A stretch of 64,000 bases of DNA, taken from positions 744,001-808,000 of the forward strand of contig CATNEN010000013.1 in assembly GCA_950097015.1 (NCBI GenBank), read 5' to 3'. The stretch comes from Macrostomum hystrix (taxonomy: Eukaryota; Animalia; Platyhelminthes). Made by a program: the position numbers and the translations under genes. How positions within the stretch are numbered: position 1 is the stretch's first letter; each line of letters begins with the position of its first letter. Positions 33,728 through 50,034 of the stretch are shown here, piece after piece. The notes under the pieces were generated by a model that was not told the origin of the DNA, made no database searches, and saw only the letters and a program-made list of their open reading frames with translations.

Positions 33728-34985
33728 TAAATCCTTATCTGTACATTCAAAGCGCACTGCCTTAAAAAATCTTTGTTTCCTTGCATATCATGGACTACAG
33801 AGGAAGATAGGATAATTCCTAGTCCTAAACCTAGATCCTAAGTTTATGTACTTGACTTACATACTAGGCATGAAGAAAACTTTCGTATTCAGAAAGCGAA
33901 GTGAATATGTTAAGATATTGTAGTGGTATTTAATATAATTTGTTTAAATAAACAGTAGATTCATGTCGCCACAGGACTTTAGCTATTATAATAATCAAAT
34001 CAAGTTATGTATAAGTTATGTATTAATTCTTTACAAGTTGTTTTCTATGGCATAGATTCTTAAAATGCAATCATGTTGCAAGTATAGTTTACTTTTGACA
34101 CTCGTTATTATCAGTTATCTTTAATTTTCAGCTAACAAAAGTTAGAAAAATATTTACTTCTTTTTGCAGATAGCATAAAATTATAGTAAGTTACCATAGA
34201 TTTTATGGTGCCTATGTGCTAGCCAGCCAATCAGTTTTTACTTTCTTTTGCCCCTGTTGATCAAATGAGAAAACTGGCAAAGTAATGACAAAATGGTAAA
34301 TGTCTTTCTTGTTGTATTTTAGGTACAGACATCCAGAAAAGTTTCAATGAATAAATATAGCATATTAGATTATGTTAAAAGCTTTCATGTAGCTTTCTTT
34401 TTATTTTTTTTTTATCTTTATTGTATCAGCTTTAGTATTCTCATATGAATTAACACACACACATACACACAAACACACTTAGAAAAAATGATATATTAAA
34501 ATAAAACATTATTAGGGATATATTTCAGATCTGGTTTAACATCATCAAAGTCTTTTATTGAACTCTTAATTAATATTTATATGACTGGTTCTAAATTCTG
34601 TTATCTATTTTGTTATAAAAATAAAATAATTTTTTCCCTTTCTCTTATCAAACAGTATTATTTTATAGTTGAATTTATAATCTTTTTACTTATATAGAAA
34701 TTATTGCCATTTTTTTTTCATTTTGCTAAATTAAACATTTCAGAAGAATGTCTGCTTTTTAAGGAGACTAAGAAAACAAAAGTTGTTTTGCTACTTTAAA
34801 TAAAAAATTTTCTGTTTTTTAGCCAGAATTATTTTTTTCTGAAAAAAACTTGTTTGCTTTTCTATTTTCTTTCTTTTATATTAAGATTCTAAACTGCAAT
34901 GGCCATTGTAGGTTTTTTTGTACATGAAAGCATGATAAACATTGTATAACATCTTTTGAATTCCAATTTAAAACCCAAGTTGCAG

Positions 34986-35733
34986 CAGGAAGTGGCTCAA
35001 AGTGGCATCCTTGAGGCCCAGCTGGGCCGGGGAGGGCCTGGCCAGGTGCAGCAGCAGCAGCAGTCTCATGAAGACCGCAGCCGCACCAATCTAATCATAA
35101 ACTATTTGCCGCAGACATTCGACACTGAGGATCTGCGCGCCTTATTTGAAAAGGCCGGGCCGATCCGGACACACAAGGTTGTGCGCGACAAGCAGACTGG
35201 CGCCTCGCTCTGCTATGGCTTCGTTGACTTCCTGTTTCCCGAGCACGCCGAGAAGGCCATCGGCGAGTTTCACGGCATGAGGCTGGGCAACAAGAAGCTG
35301 CGCGTTGCCTACGCGGCCACTGGCAGCAGCTCCTGCGCCGGCTTTGTTGGTCCCGATGGCTCGCCGCTGCCACTGCCGACCATGCCGCCTCGCGCCGAGC
35401 GTCACAGCGGTGGTGCCGGCTCCGGTGTCGGCAATGGGGGCAGCTTCATCGGCGGCGGTGGCGGCCTCTGCGGCTCAGGCAGCGGCGGTTCCGCGCTGCC
35501 GTTGCGCAATCCCGGCAATCTGTACGTGTCCGGCATTCCGCGCAGCTGGACCGAAGCCGATCTGAACGCGCTATTCTCCAGATTTGGCAAGCTGGTTCAG
35601 ATCCGCGTGCTGACAGATCCCAACAGCGGCCTGTCCAAAGGAGTCGGCTTCGTCACCTTCGATGACAAGGGCAACGCCGAGAGGGCCATAATTGAAACTA
35701 ACGGGCTGCAGGTAGGCAAATGCGGGGCTTGAA

Positions 35734-35766
<33 letters not shown>

Positions 35767-37910
35767 GTGTGTGTGTGTGTGTGTGATTCATTCCTGCAAT
35801 TTCCAAAGTGGCGTGCAACTAATAACCACCCAGGTGACTGTCCCTGTGTTACTTTGGCTTTACTCTACTGTTGCCTCACAGTCGCTAGGCTGTAATTATC
35901 CTATTTTTGGGGGGATTTTATGGCGTTTAAACCGCTAGAGGGACTCAGATAAGATAACGATCCACGCGACGATTTTAGGGCGCGCTTAGAGAGCGATTAG
36001 CATCTGCTTCCCAAATCTTTCTAGCAGCTAAACTATGCCAGCTAACACACGGTTTGACAAATTTATATGCCTTGCCAACTAAACAGAGAACGAATTTAAT
36101 AGACGACATCGGGCCGGATCAACATAGAGGACTAAAAACAGAGGATAGATGAGACGTAGGAGAGATGAGTAAGGTGAGAGATAATACCAGGGACAGATAA
36201 GGCAGTAAAGACAGGGGAGAAATGGGAAATGGTCATGGAAGGTGAGATATGAGAGAGATTAGGAAAGATTAGATAGGAGACGAGAAATTAGGTTCGAGAG
36301 GTGAGACCGGAGAGGTTAGACATGAGAGATTGAATAAGAAAGTTGAGATAGGATGGACGCAGTTGCCCGACTCCTGATCTGATCCAACCCAATCTTCACC
36401 GTCTATTCAACTTTTTTAAAGAATAATTCCGCAATGAGTTCTTTACTCAATAGTAAATATTAGAATAGTGTGTGCGTCATCGCCTAGTACAGTAATCACT
36501 ATTTATAGACCAATCTAGATGGGATGGAGAGAGAGTGTGGCTGGGTGGGCTTTTGTTGCCCCTCCGTTCGATCAATAGACCCCAGTTGCCTCCCTTTGCT
36601 ATGCCATCCACCGCCGTGCAATTTTCGTGTCTCCTTCTCTGCCCTCTCTCTTCGTAGTTGAAGGCGTATGTCAATGCCTCTCAGACTTAAATTGAGTAAC
36701 CAGACTAAACCCAACCCAGCTTAAGCTTTCCTGCAACACTGACTCATTGTACTTAGGCGCATCATTGTTAGTGGGTGGACGCCTAGATGAAGTAGCCAAC
36801 ACGCACAAAAGAAGTTTCCAGTACGTTTCTGGTTTGTTGAAAATCTTTTACAAGCTTTGGTTGTTCGTCTGTACTGTAAGAAGCGGTCATTATTGTTGAG
36901 ATTCCATTGTTCGCGCTAGGCTTGTCTGTCTAGCCTAAATTATCTAATAGGTTGGCATTGTGAGTGCGCCTGCTTTCCCACGCGAGTTCATAGTTAAATG
37001 CGCGACATGATTTTAACTTTTTTCCTCTCCTAAAAGAAGATAGACGAACAAGATGACCGATATTAAGCAGAGTAGAGTAGTGTGCTCAATGTGAAGCCTG
37101 GGAGAAATTCACGCGATGAGACAGTGCTCAGCATGTGCCAAGCACAATACAGTATTGTATTGTTTCCTGCTGAACCATACAAATGTGATTATTAATGTGT
37201 CTGTCACTTCTGGATGTCTAATACTCTTTCAGAATTGGTCAGCACCCAATAAAAAATTAACTATTACGGTTTTATAGTAGACACTGAAGCACTGGGTCTC
37301 AGGGTTTTATAGTACACTGAAGCACTGGGTCTCAGGGTTTTATAGTACACTGAAGCACTGGGTCTCAGGGTTTTATAGTACACTGAAGCACTGGGTCTCA
37401 GGGTTTTATAGTACACTGAAGCACTGGGTCTCAGGGTTTTATAGTACACTGAAGCACTGGGTCTCAGGGTTTTATAGTACACTGAAGCACTGGGTCTCAG
37501 GGTTTTATAGTACACTGAAGCACTGGGTCTCAGGGTTTTATAGTACACTGAAGCACTGGGTCTCAGGGTTTTATAGTACACTGAAGCACTGGGTCTCAGG
37601 GTTTTATAGTACACTGAAGCACTGGGTCTCAGGGTTTTATAGTACACTGAAGCACTGGGTCTCAGGGGTTTGTTTTACCCGACCAACCTCCTCAGGGCCC
37701 AGAATGGCCGGCTCCGCTGCTGGTGAAATTCGCCGAGGATGGCTCGGCCAGGGCCCGCTCCGGACCGCGCCACGCTGGGCTGTCAGCTTCGTTCAACCTG
37801 CCGCTGGACACCGGGCGTCAGGGCGGCTCCGGCGCCTGCCGACTGAGCGCCAGCCTGTGCGGCCCGTCCAGCTCAGCCATGAACGGATCTTCGGGCTTCA
37901 GCTCCGGCGG
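34986..37910 (+). CDS. ELAV/Hu/Sxl-type RRM1-RRM2 exons (34986/34989-35711 and 37696-37910); N-terminal exon not identified
   Basis: TNLIINYLPQ...SLCYGFVDF...KKLRVAYA and NLYVSGIP...SKGVGFVTFD...NGLQ|GPEWPAPLLVKFA. Phase-0 GT-AG junction. The ORF-track start is TTG, not ATG. Confidence 0.9.
35734..35785. repeat. (TG)n microsatellite
   Basis: Read directly. Confidence 0.95.
37266..37667. repeat. 33-bp minisatellite GGTTTTATAGTACACTGAAGCACTGGGTCTCAG, ending ~30 bp before a splice acceptor
   Basis: About 12 near-identical units. Confidence 0.95.
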
Positions 37911-37974
37911 GTGAGCACTTGAGGCTGCATTTTTGAATTTTATGTTTGTTTTTACCTGCGCGGATATTGCCTTA

Positions 37975-38330
37975 CCTGAGATTATCCAGCGCGGAGATTG
38001 TCTCACCTGAGATTATCCAGCGCGGAGATTGTCTCACCTGAGATTATCCAGCGCGGAGATTGTCTCACCTGAGATTATCCAGCGCGGAGATTGTCTCACC
38101 TGAGATTATCCAGCGCGGAGATTGCCTCACCTGAGATTATCCAGCGCGGAGATTGCCTCACCTGAGATTATCCAGCGCGGAGATTGCCTCACCTGAGATT
38201 ATCCAGCGCGGAGATTGCCTCACCTGAGATTATCCAGCGCGGAGGTTGTCTCACCTGAGATTATCCAGCGCGGAGATTGTCTCACCTGAGATTATCCAGC
38301 GCGGAGATTGTCTCACCTGAGATTATCGAG
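37975..38330. repeat. 31-bp minisatellite CCTGAGATTATCCAGCGCGGAGATTGTCTCA
   Basis: About 11 tandem units. Confidence 0.95.
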
Positions 38331-39496
38331 CGCTGTGGTGGTCTCACGTGTGATTATCCCTCCAAGAGATTTTCTTCCCTTAGTTACTGCAATAAAAGAA
38401 ATTATTCTAAATGAAGTTTTTTTCTCTTTAGTTTTCCCATAGAAAGTGTTAGAAATTTTGTTTTGTTCTTTTAGCTTCTGAGTTCTTTAAAATCAATGCT
38501 CAATTGAGTACATTTGGCGGCTTACTTCAAAGAGTTGCTGGGGTCAATTTAGAAAACAGAAAAAGGCACAACTGCAATAAAAAGCGCAGCTGTGTGATAA
38601 GATTCAGGTGACTTGTAAAATTAGATTTTTTTATTACAATCTAAATCTTGCTCACACAGAATTATTATTATAGGTGAGTAAGTTAAATAGACAATACAAT
38701 TTACTATCCTTCAGTTGAGCACTGTGCCCAACACATGAGGGACTCATAGTAATATCTTTTTGGACTCAGTGAATAAAATCTGATTAAAATCTTGCAAGTA
38801 GTGTTTGCGCTTCCAAACTGCTTATGAAATAGGGCTCTGCAGCTATCGCCATTTCGTGTTTACGCGCTTCGTCAGTTTATAATTGTGCCGTGAGCCAGAG
38901 TTTAAATAATACAAGTTGTGTAGGAATGCTATTTATTGTTAGAATCTATATAGCATAGCACAGGTTGCTAATTTTCTTACTCCGGCCGGAAATTGCTTTG
39001 CATGTGGGCTCCGAACGGATTGAGAAAGATTTCTATCGCTTATGGAGGTCATTTTGGTCCACGAACAGTTTTGCTTGCTGTTTGACTATTTGTGTAGATT
39101 GCTAGAGAAATTCAGGTATAATTCTAATAGCAATTATAAGGGGGTCATATTTGAAATGATTAGACAATTAAACTTAATAAAAGCTGCATTTCAGTTAGTT
39201 AGTGGCGCATGTACTAATTACATGATGGATAAACAAATGTACTTTTATCCAATTAACCGCTTGTTAAAGTAGCGTTTTTTATTTTAGGAAATAAAGCTGC
39301 CCTCGATACCGTAGCTCTGTCCTACCTATAGAATTGAGCCTATAGTTGAGTAGCTACATGCTCTCCCTGAGAAACTACCTCAGTTGATTCCGTTCCGAAA
39401 TATTTTATAGTGCTTTTTCTGTTTCTTGCAGGTTAAAGCAAGGGTCTGGATTTCTAAGTAATTAATTATCTTTCGAGCATTTTTTTGCGAAATACA

Positions 39497-42400
39497 TGTA
39501 GGAATTGTGAAACGCGACTGTTTGTAGTAGTCGATAGCCGAAATAACATAAGAGCGAATAATATGCGATACAGTATATTTTATTATAAAATCTGAGTTTG
39601 AGCTGGGGTGGCGGCTAAAGCCGCACCCCGTACATTAGCTAACGTGCGTGCCAAGGGGGGAGAGAGGCGGCAGAGAGAAAGAACGTAGAACGCCGCCAAC
39701 CCCACGCACGCGTGACGGCTGGCGCCGCCTACACTTCTCCCCCCCAAAGGAATAAAACGAAATAGGAAAAAACTAAACTTTGAACACGAGATTAACAGTT
39801 CAGATGATAGAAACTTAATGAATGATTAGAGCACAATTCCTTAGTTACTTGTACCGCTTAGGCTTGTCACGGGCAGCTCTAGGATGGCGTCTCAGTGCCA
39901 CGGCATCATTTTCCTGACCAGTATCCTGGCCGACAGGCGGAGGCGTGCCGGCAGGCGGAGGTGGGCCGGCAGGCGGGCCGGCAGGTGGGCCGGCAGGCGG
40001 GCCGGCAGGCGGGCCGGCAGGCGGGCCGGCAGGCGGGCCGGCAGGCGGGCCGGCAGGCGGGCCGGCAGGCGGGCCGGCAGGCGGGCCGGCAGGCGGGCCG
40101 GCAGGCGGGCCGGCAGGCGGGCCGGCAGGCGGGCCGGCAGGCGGGCCGGCAGGCGGGCCGGCAGGCGGGCCGGCAGGCGGGCCGGCAGGCGGGCCGGCAG
40201 GCGGGCCGGCAGGCGGGCCGGCAGGCGGGCCGGCAGGCGGGCCGGAAGGCGGGCCGGCAGGCGGGCCGGCAGGCGGGCCGGCAGTCGGGAAAATTGGTCG
40301 TAGCTGAGTCACGTGTCGCATGCAGGACTGTTGGCCTCGTCGTAGGATGCAGGTGTCGCCTCGAACCTCTTCTACCGTCCAAGGCTGGGTCTCGAATGGC
40401 AGCTGAGTTTTGATGCGTGTCTGCTGCTTTCGGAGAACCATTGTGCCGGGAACTACTCTGTGCTCCTTGGCGGTGTTGCGCTTGTCAAAGGCTCGCTTCA
40501 TTTCGCGCGTGTACTGCCGACTCCAGTCCCTCACGGCTTGATGGTCGCATCCAGTCACAGTTGGCTGCCGAATAGCCGGGATTCCGTCGTTGATCGCCCT
40601 GCCCATGAGTAGCTCGGCCGGGGTGCGTCCTGTGGCTCTGTGTGGCGTGGTGCGGAATGCCAGTAGCCAGTCGTCTAGGGCCTCTCTCCAGTTCCGGCCC
40701 TCAGCAATCGCCGTCTTGATCACCTTGCCGATACTGCGGTTGACGCGTTCGGTGGCTCCGTTGGACTCCGGGTGCAGCGGACAGATAAGCCGGTGATGAA
40801 CCCCATAATCGGTGAGGAAGTTGCGAAATTCAGCGGAGTTGAAGGGCGGTCCGTTGTCCGTAATGACCTCCGCAGGAATTCCGTGGCGACTGAAGAGCCG
40901 TCTCAGGTGCGGTGTCACGCTGCCGGCCGTGGTTGACTGCATTACGTCGACTTCTGGGTATTTGGAGTACAAGTCGGTGGTGACGAGCAGCATGTGACCT
41001 TGCACCGGACCGTAGAAGTCCATGCCGAGCAGCTGCCAAGGCCCGTCGGGCATTTCCGTCGGCTTTAGAGGCGTCTGCTGCACGTGCGTTGCCGCTGCCT
41101 GACAGTAGATGCAGCACTTGACAAAGACTTCGCAGTCGCTGTACATTTTGGGCCACCAGACCTTGGTTTGCAGGCGCTTGAGAGTCCTGTCCGCCCCGAG
41201 GTGTCCGGTGTGAGCCAGCTGCAGGATCGGCCTCCGCAGTGCCTCGGGGATGACGATGAGATCTCCGCGAAGCAGGACGCCGTCGTTCTCGGTTAGTTCG
41301 CTGCTGATGGACTTGAATGAGCGTTGCACCGGGCTGAGAGTGTTCCAGTTGCCGGTTCTGATCGCGCCGAGTGCAGCCTGCATTTCCGCATCAGATCTTG
41401 CAGCCTCTCTGATCTTTTGGATTGTGAAGCCCTTTGGCACGGCACCAGTTGATACAGCGTTGACGTGGGCTTCATCGATGACCTCGCCGATGTTTGGCCT
41501 CGACTCCGGCAGCGGCTGGCGGCTAAGCAGATCGGCTGGATTTGCTGGTCCCGGCCTGTACAACAGAGTAAAGCGGAGGTGCTGGATGCGGAGGGCCATT
41601 CGCTCGATCCGCGGCGGTGGGCGGGAACCCGGCTTGAACAGTGGAACGAGGGGCCGGTGGTCCGTCACAACGGTGAAGTTCGGGTCGCCTGCCAGGTAAT
41701 GTTCGAATTTCAGGCAGGCGAACTTGATGGCCAGCGCCTCCCGCTCAATCTGCGCATACCGCTGCTCCACCGGCGACAGAGCTCTGCTGGCATAGGCCAC
41801 GGGCCGGCTGCTGCCGTCTGGCTGCTTCTGGGTGAGAATGGCGCCGAGTCCGATCGGAGATGCGTCCACCAGGAGCTCCGTGTGCCGCTTGCGATCGAAG
41901 AATGCTAGCGTGTCGGCGTTGGCAATTGCACTTTTGATGCTGTTGAATGCCTTGGTGTGGCTGTCGGTCCATTCCCACGGCTGGCCCTTTTTAGTCAGTT
42001 GGCGCAGCGGGGCTGACACGTCAGCGTATCCAGAAATAAACTTCGCCAGAAAGTTTGCTGTGCCGAGGAATGACCGTATTTCTGAGACATTGGCGGGCTG
42101 CCGGAAGTCCTGCATTGCTTGGATCTTCTCGGCAGCTGGTTGGATGCCCTTGGCTGACATATGCATTCCGAGGAAGTCGACTGCTGGCTTGGCGAACTTG
42201 CACTTGTCTTTGTTCAACGTGATGCCAAACTCGCGGAGGCGTTGAAGACATAGATCCAGTCTTTCATGATGTTGTTTGATATCTGCGGCGTACACGATGA
42301 CATCGTCATGGACCCACCTGACGCCGTCAATGCCGCTGAGGATGCCTAGCATAACCCGTTGAAGGATTTCTGAGGCGTTGGTAAATCCCATGCTCAGCCG

Positions 42401-44396
42401 CTTCAGTCGCATCAGTCCGAGCGGCGTGCTGAATGTGAACAGATGTCGGCTGTCTTCGTGCACGGGGATCTGATAGAAAGCTTTCCGGATGTCGAGCTCG
42501 CTGAAAAGCTTGGCTCCAGACATCTCCTCGGTGACTTCGTCCAGTGTCGGGATCTGCTGCTTTTCCGGAACAACGAAGGCGTTCAAGTCGCGAAGGTCTT
42601 GGCATATTCTGACGCCGCCGTCCGCCTTGGGCACTACGACCATGCGTGCCACCCAGGCGCTGGGTCCCTTGACTGCTTCGATGATGTCCTGTCGCTCCAA
42701 TGCCTTCAGCTCGTCCACCACGGTTGCTCTTAGATGCGCCGCTACCCGGGAAGGCGCGTGGCAGACTGGAACGGCGTCGCCTGACAGCTGCACTTTCACC
42801 TGCACGCCCTTGATGCATCCGATGCCTTCGAAGACTTCTCTGTGACGGTGCAGGATGTCTTGCAGCTGCGGTGACAATCCCGCTGTGCTGTTTGAGTGCA
42901 CGGCTTCCGTCTCGCTCGAATCGGGGCGCTGGATTTTGAGCACTCCTAGTCTGAATGCGGGCTCGCGACCGAGAATCGTCAGGCCGTCACCATCCATGAT
43001 GTAGAACGGAGTGACGGTGCTGGCTGATCCAACGTGGACTTGTAAGTCGGAGACACCCAGGATCTTCAGCGGTGAGGCGCAACCGTAGGCTCGCACCTCG
43101 GATTTTGGAGCTCGCAGATGCGGCCGGCGGAGGGTCTTGAAGGTGCATTTGCTCATAATGCTGCAGCTAGCTCCGCTGTCAATCATCATCGGGAGCTGCT
43201 GATCTCCCACTCGGATTTTCAGCGAGACGTCAGGCGGATAGATGCCTTCCCTGTGCAGTGTGAACACGTCTTGGCTGGAGGTGTCACCAGGAGCTGTGCG
43301 GTATGCGTTGGCGTGAATCTGCTGTTGGACTCTGTTGCTGCTTAACCGCGGCTGGCGGCAAGCCTTTGCTAGGTGGTTTGGCTTGCCGCAGTTGTGGCAG
43401 ATTTTGCCCTTGGCTGCGTCACAGGAAGCGTGGCCGCGCTCGCCGCAGCGGTAGCAAGTCTGTGACCGGCTCTGCCTGGCCTCGCTGTGTGGCGTGCGTT
43501 TGTCTGACGCTGTTTGGCTTCTATTGGCCACGCTGGCCACCTGCGACTCGGTGGTCTTCTCCATCTCAGCAGCCTGTTCTTCCGCAGCTTCGAATGCTCT
43601 GGCCTTCCGCAGCGCGTCTTCCAGTGAGATGTTTGCTTCCTGGAGCAGCCGTCTGCGCAGCTTGTCGGAGGTGCATGTAGCAACAAGTTGGTCTCGGATG
43701 AGGGAGTCGCGTAAGTCGCCGAATTCACATGGTTCAGCAGCCGTCCGCAGCCTGCTGTACCAAGCTTCGATTTTCTCACCAGATTGTTGGACACACAGAC
43801 GGAACTGGTATCGAGCGTAAACGATGTTCTTTCTATCGTCGAAGTGTTGCCTCAGTCCCTTGAAGATGGTCTGCAGTGTGTGTTCCTGCTCCTGGCCGTC
43901 GGCGTCAGACCTGGGCTTTGGTAGTTCCCGAATGATGTCCGAGACTTCCTTTCCGGCCGTGTAGCAGAGCAGCTTGCATTTTTGGTTTTCATTGGCAATT
44001 CCGGATGCCTCAATAAAGTCTGCGAATCGCGCTGCCCATTCGTTCCAACGTTTGCCCGCGTTGTGCGGGTCGTGAGTAATGAGAAATGGCTCGGGTGGAG
44101 GTAGAGAAACGTAGCTTGTGGCCATGCCCCGCGTTGGCTGCGATGGCTTGCGATGCCACTGTAGGAATTGTGAAACGCGACTGTTTGTAGTAGTCGATAG
44201 CCGAAATAACATAAGAGCGAATAATATGCGATACAGTATATTTTATTATAAAATCTGAGTTTGAGCTGGGGTGGCGGCTAAAGCCGCACCCCGTACATTA
44301 GCTAACGTGCGTGCCAAGGGGGGAGAGAGGCGGCAGAGAGAAAGAACGTAGAACGCCGCCAACCCCACGCACGCGTGACGGCTGGCGCCGCCTACA
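39497..44396 (-). mobile_element. Full-length Ty3/Gypsy LTR retrotransposon
   Basis: 237-bp LTRs at 39497-39733 and 44160-44396 (TGTAGG...CCTACA), identical by eye. 5-bp TSD ATACA, PPT GGGGGGGAGAAG next to the 3' LTR, and PBS-like TGGCATCGC after the 5' LTR. Confidence 0.97.
39845..44125 (-). CDS. Single gag-pol ORF (CCHC, protease DSGA, RT WVHDD, RNase H, integrase) with a PPAG-repeat tail
   Basis: Uninterrupted ORF with Gypsy domain order RT-RH-IN. The likely start is MATSYVSLPPPEPF at 44125; the ORF-track start at 44212 lies inside the LTR. Confidence 0.95.
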   Translation of the reverse strand: MATSYVSLPPPEPFLITHDPHNAGKRWNEWAARFADFIEASGIANENQKCKLLCYTAGKEVSDIIRELPKPRSDADGQEQEHTLQTIFKGLRQHFDDRKNIVYARYQFRLCVQQSGEKIEAWYSRLRTAAEPCEFGDLRDSLIRDQLVATCTSDKLRRRLLQEANISLEDALRKARAFEAAEEQAAEMEKTTESQVASVANRSQTASDKRTPHSEARQSRSQTCYRCGERGHASCDAAKGKICHNCGKPNHLAKACRQPRLSSNRVQQQIHANAYRTAPGDTSSQDVFTLHREGIYPPDVSLKIRVGDQQLPMMIDSGASCSIMSKCTFKTLRRPHLRAPKSEVRAYGCASPLKILGVSDLQVHVGSASTVTPFYIMDGDGLTILGREPAFRLGVLKIQRPDSSETEAVHSNSTAGLSPQLQDILHRHREVFEGIGCIKGVQVKVQLSGDAVPVCHAPSRVAAHLRATVVDELKALERQDIIEAVKGPSAWVARMVVVPKADGGVRICQDLRDLNAFVVPEKQQIPTLDEVTEEMSGAKLFSELDIRKAFYQIPVHEDSRHLFTFSTPLGLMRLKRLSMGFTNASEILQRVMLGILSGIDGVRWVHDDVIVYAADIKQHHERLDLCLQRLREFGITLNKDKCKFAKPAVDFLGMHMSAKGIQPAAEKIQAMQDFRQPANVSEIRSFLGTANFLAKFISGYADVSAPLRQLTKKGQPWEWTDSHTKAFNSIKSAIANADTLAFFDRKRHTELLVDASPIGLGAILTQKQPDGSSRPVAYASRALSPVEQRYAQIEREALAIKFACLKFEHYLAGDPNFTVVTDHRPLVPLFKPGSRPPPRIERMALRIQHLRFTLLYRPGPANPADLLSRQPLPESRPNIGEVIDEAHVNAVSTGAVPKGFTIQKIREAARSDAEMQAALGAIRTGNWNTLSPVQRSFKSISSELTENDGVLLRGDLIVIPEALRRPILQLAHTGHLGADRTLKRLQTKVWWPKMYSDCEVFVKCCIYCQAAATHVQQTPLKPTEMPDGPWQLLGMDFYGPVQGHMLLVTTDLYSKYPEVDVMQSTTAGSVTPHLRRLFSRHGIPAEVITDNGPPFNSAEFRNFLTDYGVHHRLICPLHPESNGATERVNRSIGKVIKTAIAEGRNWREALDDWLLAFRTTPHRATGRTPAELLMGRAINDGIPAIRQPTVTGCDHQAVRDWSRQYTREMKRAFDKRNTAKEHRVVPGTMVLRKQQTRIKTQLPFETQPWTVEEVRGDTCILRRGQQSCMRHVTQLRPIFPTAGPPAGPPAGPPSGPPAGPPAGPPAGPPAGPPAGPPAGPPAGPPAGPPAGPPAGPPAGPPAGPPAGPPAGPPAGPPAGPPAGPPAGPPAGPPAGPPAGPPAGPPAGPPPPAGTPPPVGQDTGQENDAVALRRHPRAARDKPKRYK

Positions 44397-44571
44397 ATAC
44401 ACATTTAATAAAAAAAGTAAAATGATCCCTTTCGTTTTGTTTAGCTTAGTGTCTTTAAATTAAAAGTGTATTTGAATATATAGCTTGCATTTTTAAGTTT
44501 ATCACAGTGCCCAGGGGTCAATTATTTGCATGGGTTTCTAAAAACATCACTATCTATGACACTGACAGTAG

Positions 44572-45190
44572 TCTAAAGTCATTATCTATGGCTGGAGTCT
44601 CAAGTCATTATCTATGGATGGAGTCTCAAGTCATTATCTATGGCTGGAGTCTAAATCATGATCTATGGCTGGAGTCTAAATCATGATCTATGGCTGGAGT
44701 CTCAAGTCATTATCTATGGCTGGAGTCTCAAGTCATTATCTATGGATGGAGTCTCAAGTCATTATCTATGGCTGGAGTCTCCAGTCATTATCTATGGCTG
44801 GAGTCTCAAGTCATTATCTATGGCTGGATTCTAAAGTCATTATCTATGGCTGGAGTCTAAATTATGTTCTATGCCTCTAGTCTAAATCATGATCTATGGC
44901 TGGAGTCTAAAGTAATTATCTATGGCTGGAGTCTAAAGTAATCTATGGCTGGAGTCTAAAGTCATTATCTATGGCTTGAGTCTAAAGTAATTATCTATGG
45001 CTGTAGTCTAAAACCATTATCTGTGGCTAGTCTAAAGTAGTTATCAATGACAGGTGTCTAAGTAATTATCTATGACAGGTGTCTCAAGTAATTATGTGTC
45101 AGGTTTTTTAAGTAATTATTTGTGACAATAAAGTAATCATCTATGGCAGGTGTCAAATTATATATTTATGGCAGGTGTCTAAAGTAGTTA
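44572..45190. repeat. 26-bp minisatellite AAGTCATTATCTATGGCTGGAGTCTC, decaying 3'-ward
   Basis: Tandem units visible. Confidence 0.9.
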
Positions 45191-45255
45191 TCAGATTTAT
45201 TAAGAATCTTATTTGAAAAGAGCATTCATTCTCTTCCGCATTGGTTCCTTATCAG

Positions 45256-48033
45256 ATTCGGTCTAAGCCGACTACTCGACTCTGACAGTCCCACCGGTGG
45301 CGGCGGCGGCGGCTTCGGCTTTGGCGGCACGCACGCTGGCATTGAAGAGATGGTGGACAGTTTGCTAATGCTGAACGCTCTGGGCACGCAGAACGCCTTT
45401 CGCACCCTGACTGGCGGCGCCAGTAACGGCGTCGGACTGGGCAGTATCGGCACCGGCCACCGGCCGCCCGGCCACAAGGAGATCACCTCCGACCTGGACG
45501 TGTCGCTCTCCAGCAACGGCTCCAGCCTTGATTCGCCGCCGCACGACGCCCTGACTGCCCTGTCCCAGCTGGGCCTGCTGGACCCGGAATTGGCCGCTGC
45601 AGCTTCGGCCGGCGTGGCGCCCGCTCCGGCGCCATTGCACATCCGCACGCCGCTAATTGAGAGCCGACCGCTGGCCCGGGCACTCGGCATCAAAGGCTGC
45701 CGTGTGTGGATCAAACTGGAGAACTGTCAGCCAACTGGCTCCGTCTGTCTGCGTGGCATGGCCAACGCTGTGCGACGCGCCGCCGAGAGGGGTTTCACAC
45801 ACGTGAGTGTCATAGTTATTTGATTCCCACAGTTCTTTGATCTTGCCGCCAGGATACCCTAATTAGTTGTTTGATGTTTCCACCATGCTTCTAACTGGTT
45901 CTTAGATTTAGCTGCCGCTTATCCAGCCGGTCTTTATCTTGCCGCCGCACGTCTAATCGGTTCTTTGATCTAACCGACGAACTTTTAATCGGTACTTTGA
46001 TCTTGCCCCCACACTTCTAACCAATTATTTTATCTTGCCGCCACGACGATTCCCTAATTAGTTTTTTTATGTTTCCACCATGCTTCTAACCGGTTCTTAG
46101 AGTTTGCCGCCAATTTTCTAGCCGGTTTTTATTTTACCGCCGTACTTGTAACCGGTTCTATGATCTTACCGACGCATTTAAACTGGTTATTTCATCTTGC
46201 TTCCACACTTCTAACCGTTTCTTTGATCTTGCCGCCCATTTTCTAACCGGCTGTTTGATCTTAGCGCCGCACTTCAAACCGGTTATTTCACCTTGCTGCC
46301 ACAATTCTATCCGTTTCTTTGATCTTGCCACCACACTTCCCACCAGTTCTTTGATCTTGCCGCCTCACTTCCCACCAGTTCTTTGATATTGCCACCTCAC
46401 TTCTAACTGTTTATGTTATTTAGCCGCTTATTTTCTAACCGGCTGATTGATCTTACCGCCGCACTTCGAATCGGTACTTTCATCTTGCCGCCGCATTTCC
46501 CAACAGTTATTTATCTTTTGAACGTATCGCTCTCTTTTTTATAATTTCTCTGGGATTTATTTAAACTTTTCTCGCCAAAAGAAACCTTGTCTGTTAAATA
46601 GGCTTTAAATATTTTTTCTGCTTTCCATGACTTTAAAACAAATTTCTGCGTCATCGTTCGTGGGTAAACGGGGCAGTACCTAGAACGCGACAAGTTTAGA
46701 AATGTATCCTCAATAATAACTAGCTAACAAAATGGTTCATTCGACCAGCGAATTGTTCAACAGGCTTGCAACGATAAAAAGCAGAGCTGCAAATTGCAAC
46801 GAACGCAAATATAAATTCATTTTGATCCGCTTTGCGGACATTGTGAACAGAAATGTTTTTTTTAACAAGCGAATTTTGTGCGAAAAAAAACGATTTAAAG
46901 ATGCTGAATCTGAATTCCTTCGCATTCATTCCTTGCTGTTAACGTGCTTTAACAATTTTAGCTAGAATTCTAGTTGCATATCTTTTTATCAAGCTTTCTA
47001 TTTAAGCTATTTCGTCAATTGTATGCAATGTGCCTCTGCTACATATTTTTATAGAATTTTAGTCCATTTCTGCGTGAATATTTTTATTCCGAATCATGAG
47101 AATAGATATCCCCATTTTGGGAGAATCTGAGTTCAAATGAATTTTTTTATTAGGGATAATATTTATTGCTCTAAATTTTACTGTTATCCCAAAATGACAC
47201 CTGCACCTCCAGGTCGTGACAAGCAGCAGCAGCAGTGGCAACTGCGGCCTCGCCTGCGCATACGCGGCTGCCCGTCTGGGCCTTCAGTGCACTGTGGTGC
47301 TGCCCGACCCGCTGGCATGCGGCCCCGGCTCTGGCTCCGCTGCTAGCGGCTGCTTAGCCGAAGAGGTCCGCGCGCGCATCGCCGACGAAGGCGCCCAGGT
47401 TGTGCTGGCTGGCTCGGCCTGGCCGGAGGCGCACGCCAGAGCCGAAGTCCTGGCCAATCAGCTGGGCCACTGCGCCTGCCTGCTGCATCCCTTCGATAGC
47501 GAGGACGTCTGGGCCGGCTACAGCGGCCTAGTCGACGAAGTGGCCGAGGCGCTTAACGGCGAACAGCCGGACGCTGTCGTCCTACCCGTGTCCGGAGGTG
47601 GCCTGCTGTCTGGCATTGTAGCCGGCCTGTGGCGCTACGGGTGGGTGACAACGCCGATTATTGCTGCCGAAACACGCGGCGTTGATCATCTGGCCGCGGC
47701 TCTGGCTGGCGGCGGCGGCGGTGGCGGTGGCGGCCGTCCTTGCCAGCGCGCTCTGGAGGCGGCAGGTGAGCAGCCGCTACACGCGGTGGCCAGCAGCCAG
47801 GAGGAGGCAGCCAGGGCCTGTGTGAGCTTCCTTGGCCAGCATCAGCAGCTGACGGAGCCAGTCTGCGGAGCCGCCTTGGCCGCTGTGTACAACCGACAGT
47901 TTGGGCCGCAGCAGCTGCTGACCAGGCCTCACCCAGCTAACATCATCGTGCTCGTCACTGGCGGCCGCTCCGTGGGGGTTCAGCAACTGTTTGAACTGGC
48001 TGGAGGCTCCCCGCAGCCGCCATCGCCACTGCC

Positions 48034-48068
<35 letters not shown>

Positions 48069-48073
48069 CTTAG
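45256..48073 (+). CDS. Low-complexity linker plus serine/threonine dehydratase-like domain (exons 45256-45802 and 47213-48073), probably the C-terminus of the RRM gene
   Basis: PLHIRTPL...VWIKLENCQPTGSVCLRG, SSGNCGLACAYAA, HPFD...WAGY, SGGGLL and EPVCGAALAAVY match SDS/SDSL motifs as recalled. The phase-0 junction FTH|VVTSS is in frame. Confidence 0.88.
45835..46510. repeat. Degenerate ~39-bp tandem repeat (TTGATCTTGCCGCC..TTCTAACCGGTT)
   Basis: Recurring motif in the SDS-domain intron. Confidence 0.75.
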
Positions 48074-48169
48074 GAGGCGATATGTTTAGAAAAAGTAATA
48101 TAACTCTGGTTGCTGAAGAGCTACTCTATTTTAACAATGGCTAGAAAATTTGAATCAACATTTCACGAT

Positions 48170-48275
48170 GAACTAACTTTCAAAGCTGTCTAACATCAGC
48201 ATCGTCTAAATATTTAGTGATTTATGTCGAAGACCTTGGTGACAAGGGCAACTAGCATTGCTCTGTGTTATCCTG
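48170..48275 (+). repeat. Dispersed-repeat copy (SINE body as at 530-620)
   Basis: ACATCAGCAT...GAAGACCTTGGTGACAAGGGCAACTAGCATTGCTCTGTGTTA. Confidence 0.5.
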
Positions 48276-50034
48276 TTAGGCGAAGAATTGGTTGAATAGT
48301 ATAAAAATCAACACTATAACCAATTCATCATCATCAACAATAATAGCCGACTAAGTTTTGTCGATTGGTTGAATAGGTATTGAGCTACAAAGACTAATAA
48401 TGTGTTAATTTTCTGATGTTTTTCTGTTTGATAATTTTCTAAGCTATCCGTGTTGTCTGTTAATTTGGTTCCGTTTGATTTCATTTTTCAAATTTGCCCT
48501 ATTTTTTAATTCAATTGCCTGTTTGAAAATCTATATAATTTCCTTTTATTGAATTTCCTATCCTCTCGCTCTGGCTCCTTTAATTTTCTACTAATACTGA
48601 TATTTATTATTTGCTTTTTCTACCGTACCGTATATTTTGTACGGCTGACTCGAAGAACTATATTTTTTATACACACTACTTGTAACATTAGTATCATGTG
48701 GTTTTTATACGCTAGCTTTGAGGCTCATGGCTACAGGATCTATTGATGCCAATACCTTATTTGATGCTGATGATAATAGTGCTTGCTTAGATGTTGATTG
48801 TACTTTTTGTTGTGGAGCGAGTATTACTTTTTTCTGACCGATTTGGATCAACTAATTTAACGTCACATCCCGGTTTCAGCGTTACATGTGAAAAAGTCTA
48901 GTGTTTCCATAGCATACCTGACTGCCAGCTGAAGTGTGTGCGTGTTTTCTATTTTCTACTAACTTTTCTATTATTATATAGCCTGCTTTTCTATTTAGTA
49001 TCAGACTGTTTTTTTTCTATTTCTTAGTTTTTTTTAGCTTTTTTTATTATCAATAATTTTGATTTTGTTTTATTTCGCTATCGTCCAAAACTTCTTGGTT
49101 CCTCCTCAAAGAAGCATAAAAGCTACTAAAAGGAAATTTTTTAGTTGGTTCATTACAGTCCATTGCAAAGCTGAACTCCTTCTCCGGAGCAGTTGAGATA
49201 TGAAATTCCTTTATTTATGGGATTGCATTGATTCTCCGCCTGTTGAATCTAGAAGTTGAAAATGCAACCATTTATTACTAGAAAAGGTGCGTCATCGATT
49301 AATTAGAAAATTGTTTCAATCCCAGTTATTTATAATCAAGGATTAAAAGATTGCCATACTCGCTATTGAATGCAATACATTATCGATTAATCGACAGGCT
49401 TAGAGGGCTTTTTCTACTTAACTTTCTTTTGTACTTCTTCACAGCTAATTTTTCTGTTGATTTATCCAGATACCCTAATTGGTTTTTAGTGAATTGGAAT
49501 TTGCATCTTTAATAATAGTGCACTGTACAGCTGGTTACCAGTGCGCGTGATTCTAGTTTATCATGTGATTCAGCTTCGTAGAAACAGGCTAGAGAAGAGA
49601 CCTATCTAACCACCTGAACTGTTTCTACTTCATTCATTTATGTTAAAATATTTTTATTGGTCTGTTTCTGTCATAAATGCCATGGTATTACTTCTCCAAA
49701 CCTTTCTCACCAATCATAGTTGCGTAGTTATTTTTCTATTGTATACTACATTTTCTGATTCTTCTGCTCGACCCATAGGTCCTTTTGATTTTTGCACCAG
49801 TTTTTTAGCATTCTATTTCAAAGAGGCGTAACGCATTATATGATTTAGCTCGTAAATATATGCACATTTCTGGCCATATTTGTTATTTTTTTAACCTCTA
49901 GTCTTTTATTGGTTTACTCTTTCGTCATATCCATTCTCAGTTTCGCTGTTGCTTAAGTTTAACTATTGCTGCCTCGAAGATTTTTACTTAGTATAAAAGT
50001 CCTACTCTCTCGTACTTAACATTTACTTTAACTC

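What the first reader, a model, noticed from the sequence alone, without database searches (positions are those of the whole stretch)
34986..48073. ELAV/Sxl-type RRM pair spliced in frame to a serine dehydratase-like domain: candidate RNA-binding protein/metabolic-fold fusion
Seen: the second RRM-gene exon (37696-37910, 215 bp) ends in phase 2 at GG|GTGAG. The next plus-strand coding-like exon starts at 45256 after a pyrimidine-tract AG, also in phase 2 (GG+A = Gly), and runs through a Gly/Ser linker into an SDS-like domain. No other exon or stop for the RRM gene was found in between, only minisatellites, AT-rich sequence and an antisense Gypsy. There is no in-frame ATG upstream of 45256 before a stop at 45185. 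Predicted product: at least 781 aa, RRM-RRM-linker-SDS-polyQ. Established: ELAV/Hu proteins end in RRM3, Sxl has two RRMs, and SDS is a stand-alone fold-type II PLP enzyme. I know of no such fusion. Inference: it could couple amino-acid or PLP status to mRNA binding or splicing.
Basis: partly seen in the sequence, partly recalled or inferred. Interest (0 to 1): 0.92.

Follow-up and report, generated by a model that had tools for sequence, protein, structure and literature searches.

The report
Flatworm ELAV-type RRM protein fused to dead serine dehydratase
The predicted splice is real: this Macrostomum gene makes one mRNA for a 785-residue protein with two ELAV-type RNA-binding domains joined to a serine-dehydratase-like domain that lacks its catalytic lysine. 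The same fusion occurs across flatworms, including schistosomes, and I found no paper that studies it.

Summary

**Transcript.** RNA-derived contigs from four runs of one study cover exons only. In single contigs of up to 2361 nt they join exon 37696-37910 to exon 45256-45802 at GT..AG, in frame. They continue into the last exon, 47213-48073.

**Start.** The 5' end carries the Macrostomum spliced leader, which supplies the ATG. The acceptor is at 34979/34980, not 34986. The product is 785 aa.

**Genome.** Size and contig count match Macrostomum hystrix.

**Not unique.** M. lignano has the same four exons and the same phase-2 junction. Many trematodes and a cestode encode RRM+PALP proteins with a near-invariant RRM1. 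Databases auto-name them "L-serine ammonia-lyase" or "serine dehydratase-like". I found no paper on them.

**State of the enzyme domain.** In Macrostomum the Schiff-base lysine is Cys, and an 11-residue stretch that the aligned enzymes all keep is replaced by poly-Gly. Even so, dN/dS is 0.17. Most trematode orthologues keep the lysine.

**Best reading.** This is an ELAV-derived RNA-binding protein whose hinge and RRM3 were replaced by a non-catalytic SDS-fold module. That module is probably a dimerisation module; a homodimer model scored 0.80 against 0.33 for the best control. Ligand sensing is untested.

The parts
34978..34979 (+). AG acceptor for spliced-leader trans-splicing; the leader's terminal ATG is the start codon
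   Evidence: In three of the four runs (X3, X5, X6) contigs carry 21 leader letters before L017:1077, which is window 34979. These letters match positions 14-34 of the 35-nt M. lignano SL (PMC8629364).
34980..35711 (+). Coding exon 1: residues 2-245. It holds RRM1 (about 35079-35315), a 65-aa Gly/Ser/Pro linker and most of RRM2 (from about 35514).
   Evidence: Pfam RRM_1 x2, 4.2e-36. Best solved matches are HuD 3.4e-38 and HuR 5.1e-38, ahead of Sxl at 5e-29. Contig pieces 1077-1806 on L017.
35712..37695 (+). Intron 1 (GT..AG), with a (GT)n run and a 33-bp x12.2 minisatellite at 37268-37671 ending 24 nt before the acceptor
   Evidence: Joint skipping 1862 nt in all 4 runs; TRF.
37696..37910 (+). 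Coding exon 2: end of RRM2 (PEWPAPLLVKFAED) and the start of the conserved linker. It ends in phase 2 (GG|GTGAGC). The unspliced frame would stop at TGA 37912-37914.
   Evidence: Contig pieces 3669-3885 on L017, whose sequence is identical to the window here.
37911..45255 (+). Intron 2, 7345 nt in this copy and 2492 nt in the C24 copy. It holds a 31-bp x13 minisatellite, the Gypsy insertion and a 26-bp x20.6 minisatellite.
   Evidence: Joint 3885|6378, GT..AG, one contig in each of 4 runs.
39497..44396 (-). Gypsy-type LTR retrotransposon inside intron 2, antisense to the gene. It has 237-bp LTRs that are 100% identical, a 5-bp target duplication (ATACA), and one open 1455-aa gag-pol frame. It is absent from the C24 copy.
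45256..45802 (+). Coding exon 3: conserved linker (residues 317-440) and the first part of the SDS-like domain
   Evidence: Pfam PALP 2.5e-10; alignment to human SDS; contig pieces 6378-6927 on L017.
45746..45748 (+). Codon TGT = Cys481, at the position of the PLP Schiff-base lysine (SFKIRG in enzymes, SVCLRG here)
   Evidence: Alignments with human SDS and with orthologues and canonical SDS. The canonical paralogue on C38 keeps SFKIRG.
45803..47212 (+). Intron 3 (GT..AG), with a degenerate 32/64/96-bp tandem array at 45888-46499
   Evidence: The loose end behind L017:6927 in all 4 runs reads the start of exon 4; TRF.
47213..48073 (+). Coding exon 4: the rest of the SDS-like domain, a poly-Gly replacement of an enzyme loop, a poly-Gln tail, and the stop TAG at 48071-48073
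   Evidence: Pfam PALP 4.1e-38. Human SDSL 2rkb 3.1e-33 and rat SDS 1e-30. ORF list.

Best explanation
**Shown.**
- Window 34980-48073 (+) is one four-exon gene of a Macrostomum flatworm.
- Its mRNA is trans-spliced to the genus spliced leader, which supplies the AUG.
- It encodes a 785-aa protein: a short N-terminus; ELAV/Hu-type RRM1; a 65-aa low-complexity linker; ELAV-type RRM2; a conserved but mostly disordered linker of about 190 aa; a serine-dehydratase-like fold-type II PLP domain; and a poly-Gln tail.
- It belongs to a family of RRM+PALP fusion proteins conserved from Macrostomorpha to trematodes and cestodes. No third RRM is present.
- In Macrostomum the SDS-like domain has lost the Schiff-base lysine (Cys481), and an 11-residue loop is replaced by poly-Gly. 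The domain is nevertheless under purifying selection.

**Inferred.**
- An ELAV paralogue's hinge and third RRM were replaced by a duplicated flatworm SDS.
- The protein binds U/AU-rich RNA through RRM1 (and RRM2).
- The dead enzyme fold serves as a homodimerisation or scaffold module. That would stand in for the multimerising role ascribed to ELAV RRM3.
- Binding of a small molecule (PLP or an amino acid) in the residual pocket is possible but untested.
For: **One transcript.**
- Single exon-only contigs (2361, 1981, 1857 and 2361 nt) in 4 runs join 1806|3669 and 3885|6378 on the C24 copy at GT..AG. They continue into exon 4.
- The 2361-nt and 1857-nt contigs start with 21 leader letters. These match the published SL.
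- Exons 2 and 3 and their splice sites are identical between that copy and the window.
- The exon-1 variants seen in the RNA are the window's own letters.
- The spliced frame is open for 785 codons.

**Conservation.**
- M. lignano PAA82197.1 and PAA73106.1 have the same 4 exons and the same GG|GTGAGCAC ... CAG|ATTCGG junction.
- RRM_1+PALP proteins occur in Schistosoma species, Trichobilharzia, Heterobilharzia, Opisthorchis, Clonorchis, Paragonimus, Dicrocoelium, Fasciolopsis, Echinostoma, Calicophoron and Mesocestoides.
- They share the RRM1 signatures EDRSRTNLIINYLPQ, GASLCYGFVDF and LRVAYA.
- S. mansoni has an uninterrupted 970-aa ORF on cDNA-like contigs; the index lists it in 175 blocks of the collection.

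**Selection, M. hystrix against M. lignano.** dN/dS is 0.009 for RRM1, 0.047 for RRM2, 0.10 for the linker and 0.17 for the SDS-like domain, at dS of about 0.75.

**Dead enzyme.** K is replaced by C. SSGGNAG is SSSSSGNCG. The loop is deleted. A Cys at VCGG, kept in all canonical SDS rows of the alignment, is Thr here. A canonical SDS with all motifs exists elsewhere in the genome.

**Dimer.** The homodimer model of the M. lignano domain scored ipSAE 0.80 against 0.33 for the best of 3 controls. Contact agreement was at least 87% and pLDDT at least 84. The mark was reached by 21 of 30 proteins solved as pairs of one chain and by 0 of 23 solved as single chains. The interface uses the segments that stay invariant across orthologues, KLENxQPTGS and LxxHxxLxEP.

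**No RRM3.** No RRM3-like exon lies in 30000-52000.
Against: - The RNA evidence is assembled contigs from one study, not raw or long reads. Contigs cannot show isoform proportions, 3' ends or rare variants.
- The reads tool was laid on the allelic C24 copy, which has a shorter intron without the Gypsy element. Correct splicing of the Gypsy-bearing window copy is therefore inferred from shared exon-1 variants, not shown directly.
- No protein-level evidence exists.
- The dimer pass may be memory of solved SDS dimers. It was done on the M. lignano orthologue, which is 79% identical in this domain.
- The SDS-domain tree does not resolve a single origin. The fused domains group at only 69/29 to 82/44 support. 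Macrostomum fused plus canonical SDS as one clade is not rejected (p-AU 0.45).
- The long RRM1-RRM2 linker differs from the short linker of Hu and Sxl tandems, so RNA specificity may differ.
- Most trematode orthologues keep the lysine, so the ancestral or parasite form may still be an enzyme.
Confidence: 0.85

Rival explanations
1. Two separate neighbouring genes: a 2-RRM gene ending at TGA 37912-37914 and an SDS-like gene starting at ATG 45350. On this reading the joined contigs are assembly chimeras or read-through noise.
For: An in-frame TGA lies 2 nt past the donor. M. lignano databases also hold split models: a 429-aa SDS-only model and a 215-aa RRM-only model. The read-laying tool warns that a contig across two genes shows no single transcript.
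Against: - The joint is an exact GT..AG skip of 2492 nt with only 1 ambiguous letter. It appears in all 4 runs, in frame, at the same depth as the flanking exons. No contig runs from exon 2 into the intron.
- The same junction is conserved in M. lignano at dS of about 0.75.
- Fused ORFs occur in more than 20 flatworm species and on S. mansoni cDNA-like contigs.
- The region of exons 2-3 that would be UTR under this model has dN/dS of about 0.08-0.13.
Confidence: 0.03
2. The fusion mRNA exists, but shorter isoforms carry much of the function. One would be an RRM-only protein of 318 aa, from intron-2 retention or intronic polyadenylation. Another would be an SDS-only protein from internal SL trans-splicing at 45256 with ATG 45350.
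For: - The GGGTGAG donor with its built-in stop is conserved in M. lignano.
- AATAAA motifs lie at 38391 and 38576.
- The S. haematobium annotation lists a 413-aa 'ELAV-like protein 2' beside the 969-aa 'variant 2'. Dicrocoelium and Trichobilharzia have several model lengths.
Against: Among the rows shown, no contig starts or ends at these places. Only contigs of 61 nt at depth about 2 lie in intron 2. GGTGAG is simply the donor consensus. Contigs drop rare variants, so this is weak evidence either way.
Confidence: 0.15
3. The SDS-like domain is mainly a ligand sensor. It would bind PLP non-covalently, or an amino acid, and switch RNA binding or partner choice. This would resemble PLP-fold effector domains fused to DNA-binding domains in bacterial MocR/GabR regulators.
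For: The phosphate loop (SGGGLL) and the Asn of the GN(A/C)G loop are kept, and Thr at the VCGG position can still hydrogen-bond. The domain is under purifying selection beyond the predicted interface. Most trematode orthologues keep a complete active-site set, including Lys.
Against: No binding data exist. An 11-residue stretch that the aligned enzymes all keep is replaced by poly-Gly and is poorly modelled (pLDDT under 50 at 654-671). The lysine was lost independently in Macrostomum, Mesocestoides and T. szidati, which argues against a conserved PLP chemistry.
Confidence: 0.2
4. The SDS-like domain in Macrostomum is still a working dehydratase or racemase that uses another residue.
For: Overall fold homology is strong (E = 3e-33 to human SDSL).
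Against: The Schiff-base Lys is Cys in both Macrostomum species. The SGGNAG loop has a 2-residue insertion and the loop is deleted. A canonical SDS gene is present to do the metabolic job.
Confidence: 0.04

Closest known systems
Flatworm RRM+PALP proteins in public databases, e.g. M. lignano PAA82197.1 / PAA73106.1, S. mansoni A0A3Q0KMS9, S. haematobium 'ELAV-like protein 2, variant 2', M. corti A0A0R3U5Y8
   Same: They share the architecture: an ELAV-type RRM1 with the same signature motifs, a second RRM, a long linker with shared short motifs (LLDS, DVSL) and a C-terminal SDS-like domain. M. lignano is 86% identical and has identical exon junctions.
   Different: Neodermatan proteins are longer (834-994 aa). 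Their RRM2 is degenerate and carries a large insertion, and they have their own 5' UTR and ATG. Most keep the PLP lysine, which Macrostomum has lost. All are automatic annotations; I found no study of them.
ELAV/Hu proteins (HuD 1FXL, HuR 4ED5) and the Macrostomum elav-like genes melav1 and melav2
   Same: RRM1 and RRM2 are of ELAV type, with RNP1 and RNP2 aromatic residues intact. The best solved matches are HuD, HuR and HuC.
   Different: - There is no hinge and no RRM3.
- The RRM1-RRM2 linker is about 65 aa. In the HuD chain the two matched stretches are only about two residues apart.
- The C-terminus is an enzyme fold.
- melav2 is a different gene: 422 aa with three RRMs (PMC2795745).
Sex-lethal (Sxl)
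   Same: It has two ELAV-like RRMs and no third one.
   Different: Sxl scores below the Hu proteins (5e-29 against 3e-38). It has a short inter-RRM linker and no enzyme domain.
L-serine dehydratase / SDS-like (human SDS 1P5J, SDSL 2RKB, rat SDS 1PWH); fold-type II PLP enzymes, Pfam PF00291
   Same: The fold and most framework motifs are shared, at about 40% identity over 255 residues. A predicted homodimer uses conserved segments.
   Different: The catalytic Lys is Cys, the Asn loop is altered and an 11-residue loop is deleted. The domain is fused behind RRMs instead of standing alone at about 320-330 aa.
MocR/GabR-type bacterial regulators: a nucleic-acid-binding domain fused to a PLP-fold domain used for dimerisation and effector sensing. 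This is an analogy from general knowledge, not homology.
   Same: A nucleic-acid-binding module is joined by a long linker to a PLP-enzyme fold that has been re-purposed for a non-metabolic role.
   Different: The fold type differs (I against II), the nucleic acid differs (DNA against RNA), and the domain of life differs. GabR keeps its lysine and PLP.

Membership tests
ELAV/Hu family | Tandem RRM1-RRM2 of ELAV type with intact RNP1 and RNP2 motifs | tested here: met
   HuD 3.4e-38 in two stretches. LIINYL / LCYGFVDF and LYVSGI / KGVGFVTF align to the Hu motifs.
ELAV/Hu family | Hinge region followed by a third RRM | tested here: not met
   Pfam finds only two RRM_1 stretches. RRM3 of five ELAV paralogues of the same genome finds nothing else in 30000-52000. 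The C-terminus is PALP.
ELAV/Hu family | Short (about 10 aa) RRM1-RRM2 linker | tested here: not met
   About 65 low-complexity residues (114-179) separate the RRMs. AF2 pLDDT is under 50 there in the orthologue.
Sex-lethal | Two-RRM protein that is closer to Sxl than to ELAV | tested here: not met
   Hu proteins score about 30 bits above Sxl.
L-serine dehydratase / SDSL (fold-type II PLP enzymes, PF00291) | PALP fold homology | tested here: met
   PF00291 at 4.1e-38 and 2.5e-10; 2rkb at 3.1e-33.
L-serine dehydratase / SDSL (fold-type II PLP enzymes, PF00291) | Schiff-base lysine in the S-F-K-I-R-G motif | tested here: not met
   The motif is SVCLRG. Cys481 (45746-45748) aligns to the lysine of human SDS, of canonical flatworm SDS and of most trematode orthologues.
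L-serine dehydratase / SDSL (fold-type II PLP enzymes, PF00291) | Gly-rich phosphate-binding loop (GGGGL) and SxGGNAG loop | tested here: inconclusive
   The Gly loop is SGGGLL, one Gly replaced by Ser. The Asn loop is SSSSSGNCG, with a 2-residue insertion and Ala replaced by Cys.
L-serine dehydratase / SDSL (fold-type II PLP enzymes, PF00291) | PLP binding and dehydratase activity | not testable with these tools
   This needs recombinant protein.
Flatworm RRM+PALP fusion family (unnamed) | N-terminal ELAV-type RRM1 with the signatures EDRSRTNLIINYLPQ, GASLCYGFVDF and LRVAYA | tested here: met
   These positions are invariant in the alignment of 10 orthologues and are present in the window's protein.
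Flatworm RRM+PALP fusion family (unnamed) | C-terminal SDS-like PALP domain on the same polypeptide, joined by splicing | tested here: met
   RNA contigs, the M. lignano gene structure and S. mansoni cDNA-like contigs.
Flatworm RRM+PALP fusion family (unnamed) | Single evolutionary origin of the fused SDS domain | tested here: inconclusive
   All flatworm SDS domains form one clade (97-99 / 94-96). Fused domains group only at 69/29 to 82/44, and the alternative is not rejected at p-AU 0.45.

The most novel reading that the evidence does not exclude
A phylum-wide flatworm post-transcriptional regulator in which a serine-dehydratase fold reads out PLP or amino-acid (serine/threonine) state and gates ELAV-type RNA binding or multimerisation. 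The fold is catalytically complete in most trematodes and dead in Macrostomum and some cestodes and schistosomatids. This would be a hard-wired link between metabolism and mRNA fate, and a parasite-specific ligandable pocket on an RNA-binding protein.
Probability: 0.15. Interest if true: 0.85.

Novelty: new variant of a known kind. Interest (0 to 1): 0.6.

Why it matters
- ELAV/Hu proteins are among the best-studied regulators of mRNA. Here RRM3 is swapped for a metabolic-enzyme fold, the swap has been kept under purifying selection across free-living and parasitic flatworms, and it has not been described.
- It is a natural test of what the ELAV C-terminal module is needed for.
- It is a clean case of an enzyme turning into a pseudoenzyme, with repeated independent loss of the lysine.
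- In schistosomes and liver flukes it is a lineage-specific RNA-binding protein with a small-molecule pocket.
- M. lignano is transgenic and open to RNAi, so function can be tested directly.
- It also shows that automatic names such as 'L-serine ammonia-lyase' mislabel this family.

Tried and rejected
- **Identity with melav2 (the published Macrostomum elav-like gene):** rejected. melav2 is 422 aa with three RRMs.
- **Literature:** searches for serine dehydratase + RRM/ELAV + Schistosoma/flatworm, and for four accession or gene ids, found nothing on the fusion. The supplements of PMC5816591 hold neither M. lignano gene id.
- **Profile search with an alignment of 10 orthologues:** no new taxa. 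The word-limited candidate list even missed Mesocestoides, so absence from planarians or other phyla is not shown.
- **SDS-domain tree and AU test on single or double origin:** unresolved.
- **Full-length AF2 model of the M. lignano orthologue:** three folded units and low confidence elsewhere (mean pLDDT 54.5, pTM 0.41). It gives no information on contacts between domains.
- **Remnant of an RRM3 exon:** none found.
- **Internal spliced-leader use at 45256, or a transcript ending after exon 2:** could not be tested. The single reads call returned contigs only.
- The stretch laid was 5951 letters, as the operators advised.
Full report
**1. The sequence.**
- The stated coordinates are correct. 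Exon 34986-35711 translates to two RRM_1 domains (Pfam 4.2e-36). It ends CAG|GTAGGC in phase 0.
- Exon 37696-37910 follows CCTCAG. It encodes the end of RRM2 (PEWPAPLLVKFAED) and ends GG|GTGAGC in phase 2.
- The exon at 45256 follows TTCCTTATCAG, and its first letter completes a Gly codon. It runs to CAC|GTGAGT at 45802.
- The last exon, 47213-48073, ends in poly-Gln and TAG.
- Exons 3 and 4 match Pfam PALP (2.5e-10 and 4.1e-38). They also match human SDSL and rat and human SDS (3e-33 to 3e-29).
'Two genes' was therefore a serious null hypothesis.

**2. Genome and a second copy.**
- The window is C13:744001-808000 of a 220.45-Mb, 42-contig assembly. That matches the published Macrostomum hystrix assembly (about 220 Mb, 42 contigs; PMC10468722).
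- A 98-99.7% identical copy lies on contig C24. It is either the other haplotype or a very recent duplicate.
- The C24 copy lacks window 39497-44395, which shortens intron 2 from 7345 to 2492 nt. That let the whole junction fit into one call of under 6000 letters.
- Exons 2 and 3 and their splice sites are identical in the two copies.

**3. RNA evidence.**
- Four runs of one 2020 study hold 28-29% of the words of the 8.4-kb locus, which equals the exon share.
- Laid on L017:1050-7000, they cover the exons and essentially nothing else. In each run one contig (2361, 1981, 1857 or 2361 nt) joins 1806|3669 and 3885|6378. Both joints are GT..AG.
- Each contig then runs on with the first letters of exon 4. 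At 2361 nt, a contig spans the leader piece to within about 16 nt of the stop, inside the CAG repeat.
- Exon-only coverage and the 5' leader show that these runs are RNA.
- Five of the six exon-1 letters that differ between the two copies appear in the contigs in the window's version. The window's copy is therefore expressed.
- The contigs cannot phase exon 1 with the Gypsy insertion, and contigs say nothing about rare isoforms.

**4. The 5' end.**
- In three runs the contig begins with 21 letters that lie on nothing in the locus. They equal positions 14-34 of the 35-nt M. lignano spliced leader, which ends in ATG (PMC8629364).
- The acceptor is AG at 34978-34979. The mRNA reads leader-ATG, then TTG CAG CAG GAA…
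- The start codon therefore comes from the leader, and the protein is 785 aa.
- This explains why the M. lignano GenBank models are marked 'partial'.

**5. The fusion is conserved.**
- An exhaustive HMMER search with exon 4 gave, as best hit, a 779-aa M. lignano protein that matched at residues 501-774 (76% identity). It also found long hits from Dicrocoelium, Mesocestoides and Trichobilharzia. Pfam finds RRM_1 plus PALP in the first three of these proteins.
- A search with the 781-aa M. lignano protein added Paragonimus, Opisthorchis, seven or more Schistosoma species, Heterobilharzia, Fasciolopsis, Echinostoma and Calicophoron. Clonorchis appeared among the cluster members. All carry PF00076 plus PF00291, and all are flatworms.
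- Their names are automatic: 'L-serine ammonia-lyase', 'Serine dehydratase-like', 'ELAV-like protein 2, variant 2', 'unnamed protein product'.
- The M. lignano locus has the same four exons and the same phase-2 junction.
- In S. mansoni the complete 970-aa ORF sits uninterrupted on contigs of about 3.85 kb, and the index lists it in 175 blocks of the collection. That is independent mRNA-level support. Those transcripts have their own 5' UTR and ATG.
- RRM1 is almost invariant from Macrostomum to schistosomes. RRM2 is canonical in Macrostomum but degenerate, with a large insertion, in Neodermata.

**6. Selection and origin.**
- Between M. hystrix and M. lignano (dS about 0.75), dN/dS is 0.009 for RRM1, 0.047 for RRM2, 0.10 for the inter-domain linker and 0.17 for the SDS-like domain. 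Every part, including the junction region, is constrained as coding sequence.
- On a tree of SDS domains, all flatworm sequences (fused, plus the canonical M. lignano SDS) form one well-supported clade (97-99 / 94-96).
- The fused domains group together only weakly (69/29 to 82/44). Placing the Macrostomum fused domain with the Macrostomum canonical SDS is not rejected (p-AU 0.45).
- A single ancient fusion is therefore the parsimonious reading. It rests on the orthologous RRM part, the shared architecture and the shared linker motifs (LLDS…, DVSL…). The enzyme-domain tree does not show it.

**7. State of the SDS-like domain.**
- Against human SDS and canonical flatworm SDS, the Schiff-base lysine (SFKIRG) is Cys481 (SVCLRG; 45746-45748).
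- SSGGNAG is SSSSSGNCG.
- An 11-residue stretch that the aligned enzymes all keep is replaced by poly-Gly.
- A Cys in VCGG, kept in all canonical SDS rows of the alignment, is Thr here.
- The Gly-rich loop is largely kept.
- A canonical SDS with all motifs lies on C38.
- Most trematode orthologues keep the lysine. Mesocestoides (Val) and T. szidati (Glu) have lost it independently. Catalysis is therefore dispensable for whatever keeps the domain.
- A homodimer model of the M. lignano domain passed the controlled test: ipSAE 0.80 against 0.33 for the best of 3 controls, contact agreement at least 87%, pLDDT at least 84. The mark was reached by 21 of 30 proteins solved as pairs of one chain and by 0 of 23 solved as single chains.
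- SDS dimers are solved, so this pass may only show likeness. The interface does use the segments that are invariant across orthologues.
- AF2 on the full orthologue gives three folded units (RRM1, RRM2 and the SDS-like domain) joined by low-confidence linkers with a few short helices.

**8. Mechanism.**
- Shown: one SL-trans-spliced mRNA; an ELAV-type RRM pair, a linker and a dead SDS fold on one reading frame; conservation and constraint.
- Inferred: an ELAV paralogue lost its hinge and RRM3 and gained a duplicated SDS. The protein binds RNA through the RRMs. The enzyme fold provides dimerisation or scaffolding, a role that in vitro work ascribes to ELAV RRM3 (as cited in PMC2795745). Ligand sensing in the residual pocket is possible but untested.

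**9. Rivals.**
- Two genes plus chimeric contigs is essentially excluded.
- Additional RRM-only or SDS-only isoforms remain open.
- Residual enzyme activity in Macrostomum is unlikely.

**10. Novelty.**
- The parts are well known (ELAV RRMs, SDS fold). The combination is visible in public proteomes, but I found no paper on it.
- The published Macrostomum elav-like gene melav2 is a different, three-RRM gene.
- I class this as a new variant of a known kind: an ELAV-family RNA-binding protein with a pseudoenzyme C-terminal module. It is one instance of an unstudied flatworm-wide family.

Noticed in passing
window 39497-44396 (- strand): A young Gypsy-type LTR retrotransposon sits in intron 2. Its 237-bp LTRs are 100% identical (TG…CA ends), it has a 5-bp target duplication (ATACA), and it carries one open 1455-aa gag-pol frame ending in a 12-bp x30 (PAGP)n repeat. 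The otherwise near-identical C24 copy has the empty site, so the insertion is polymorphic or very recent.
   Followed up: partly
window 34978-34980; L017:1077: The gene's start codon is not in the genome. It is supplied by the ATG at the end of the spliced leader. In M. lignano the genomic sequence at the same place happens to read ATG TTG CAG CAG (L018, about 2989-3000).
   Followed up: partly
G000:C24:102000-111999 (L017) against window 33900-48774: A second copy of the whole locus lies on another contig, 98-99.7% identical apart from the Gypsy element and minisatellite lengths. It is either an uncollapsed haplotype or a very recent segmental duplication. Exon-1 variants of both versions occur in RNA contigs.
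   Followed up: partly
window 37268-37671, 37958-38359, 44570-45095, 45888-46499: All three introns carry minisatellites: 33 bp x12.2 ending 24 nt before the exon-2 acceptor, 31 bp x13, 26 bp x20.6, and 32/64/96 bp x19. Copy numbers differ between the two genomic copies.
   Followed up: no
G000:C38:14787049-14789223 (- strand; L006 about 7053-9223): The canonical serine dehydratase paralogue lies here, with intact SFKIRG and SSGGNAG motifs. One of its introns holds a proline-rich tandem repeat.
   Followed up: partly
G000:C13:79141-80310 (-), C31:3494045-3495217 (-), C20:69429-70457 (+): These are apparently intronless three-RRM ELAV paralogues, with open frames of 422, 427 and 377 aa. The 422-aa frame has the same length as the published melav2 of M. 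lignano and may be its orthologue.
   Followed up: no
P0005 (Tubulanus polymorphus, 568 aa): A nemertean 'serine dehydratase-like' protein carries two N-terminal PDZ domains in front of a PALP domain. This is another unusual fusion of this enzyme fold in Spiralia.
   Followed up: no
P0331 against P0321 (Schistosoma haematobium): The annotation lists a 413-aa 'ELAV-like protein 2' and a 969-aa 'variant 2' in the same cluster. This hints at an RRM-only isoform of the fusion gene in schistosomes.
   Followed up: no
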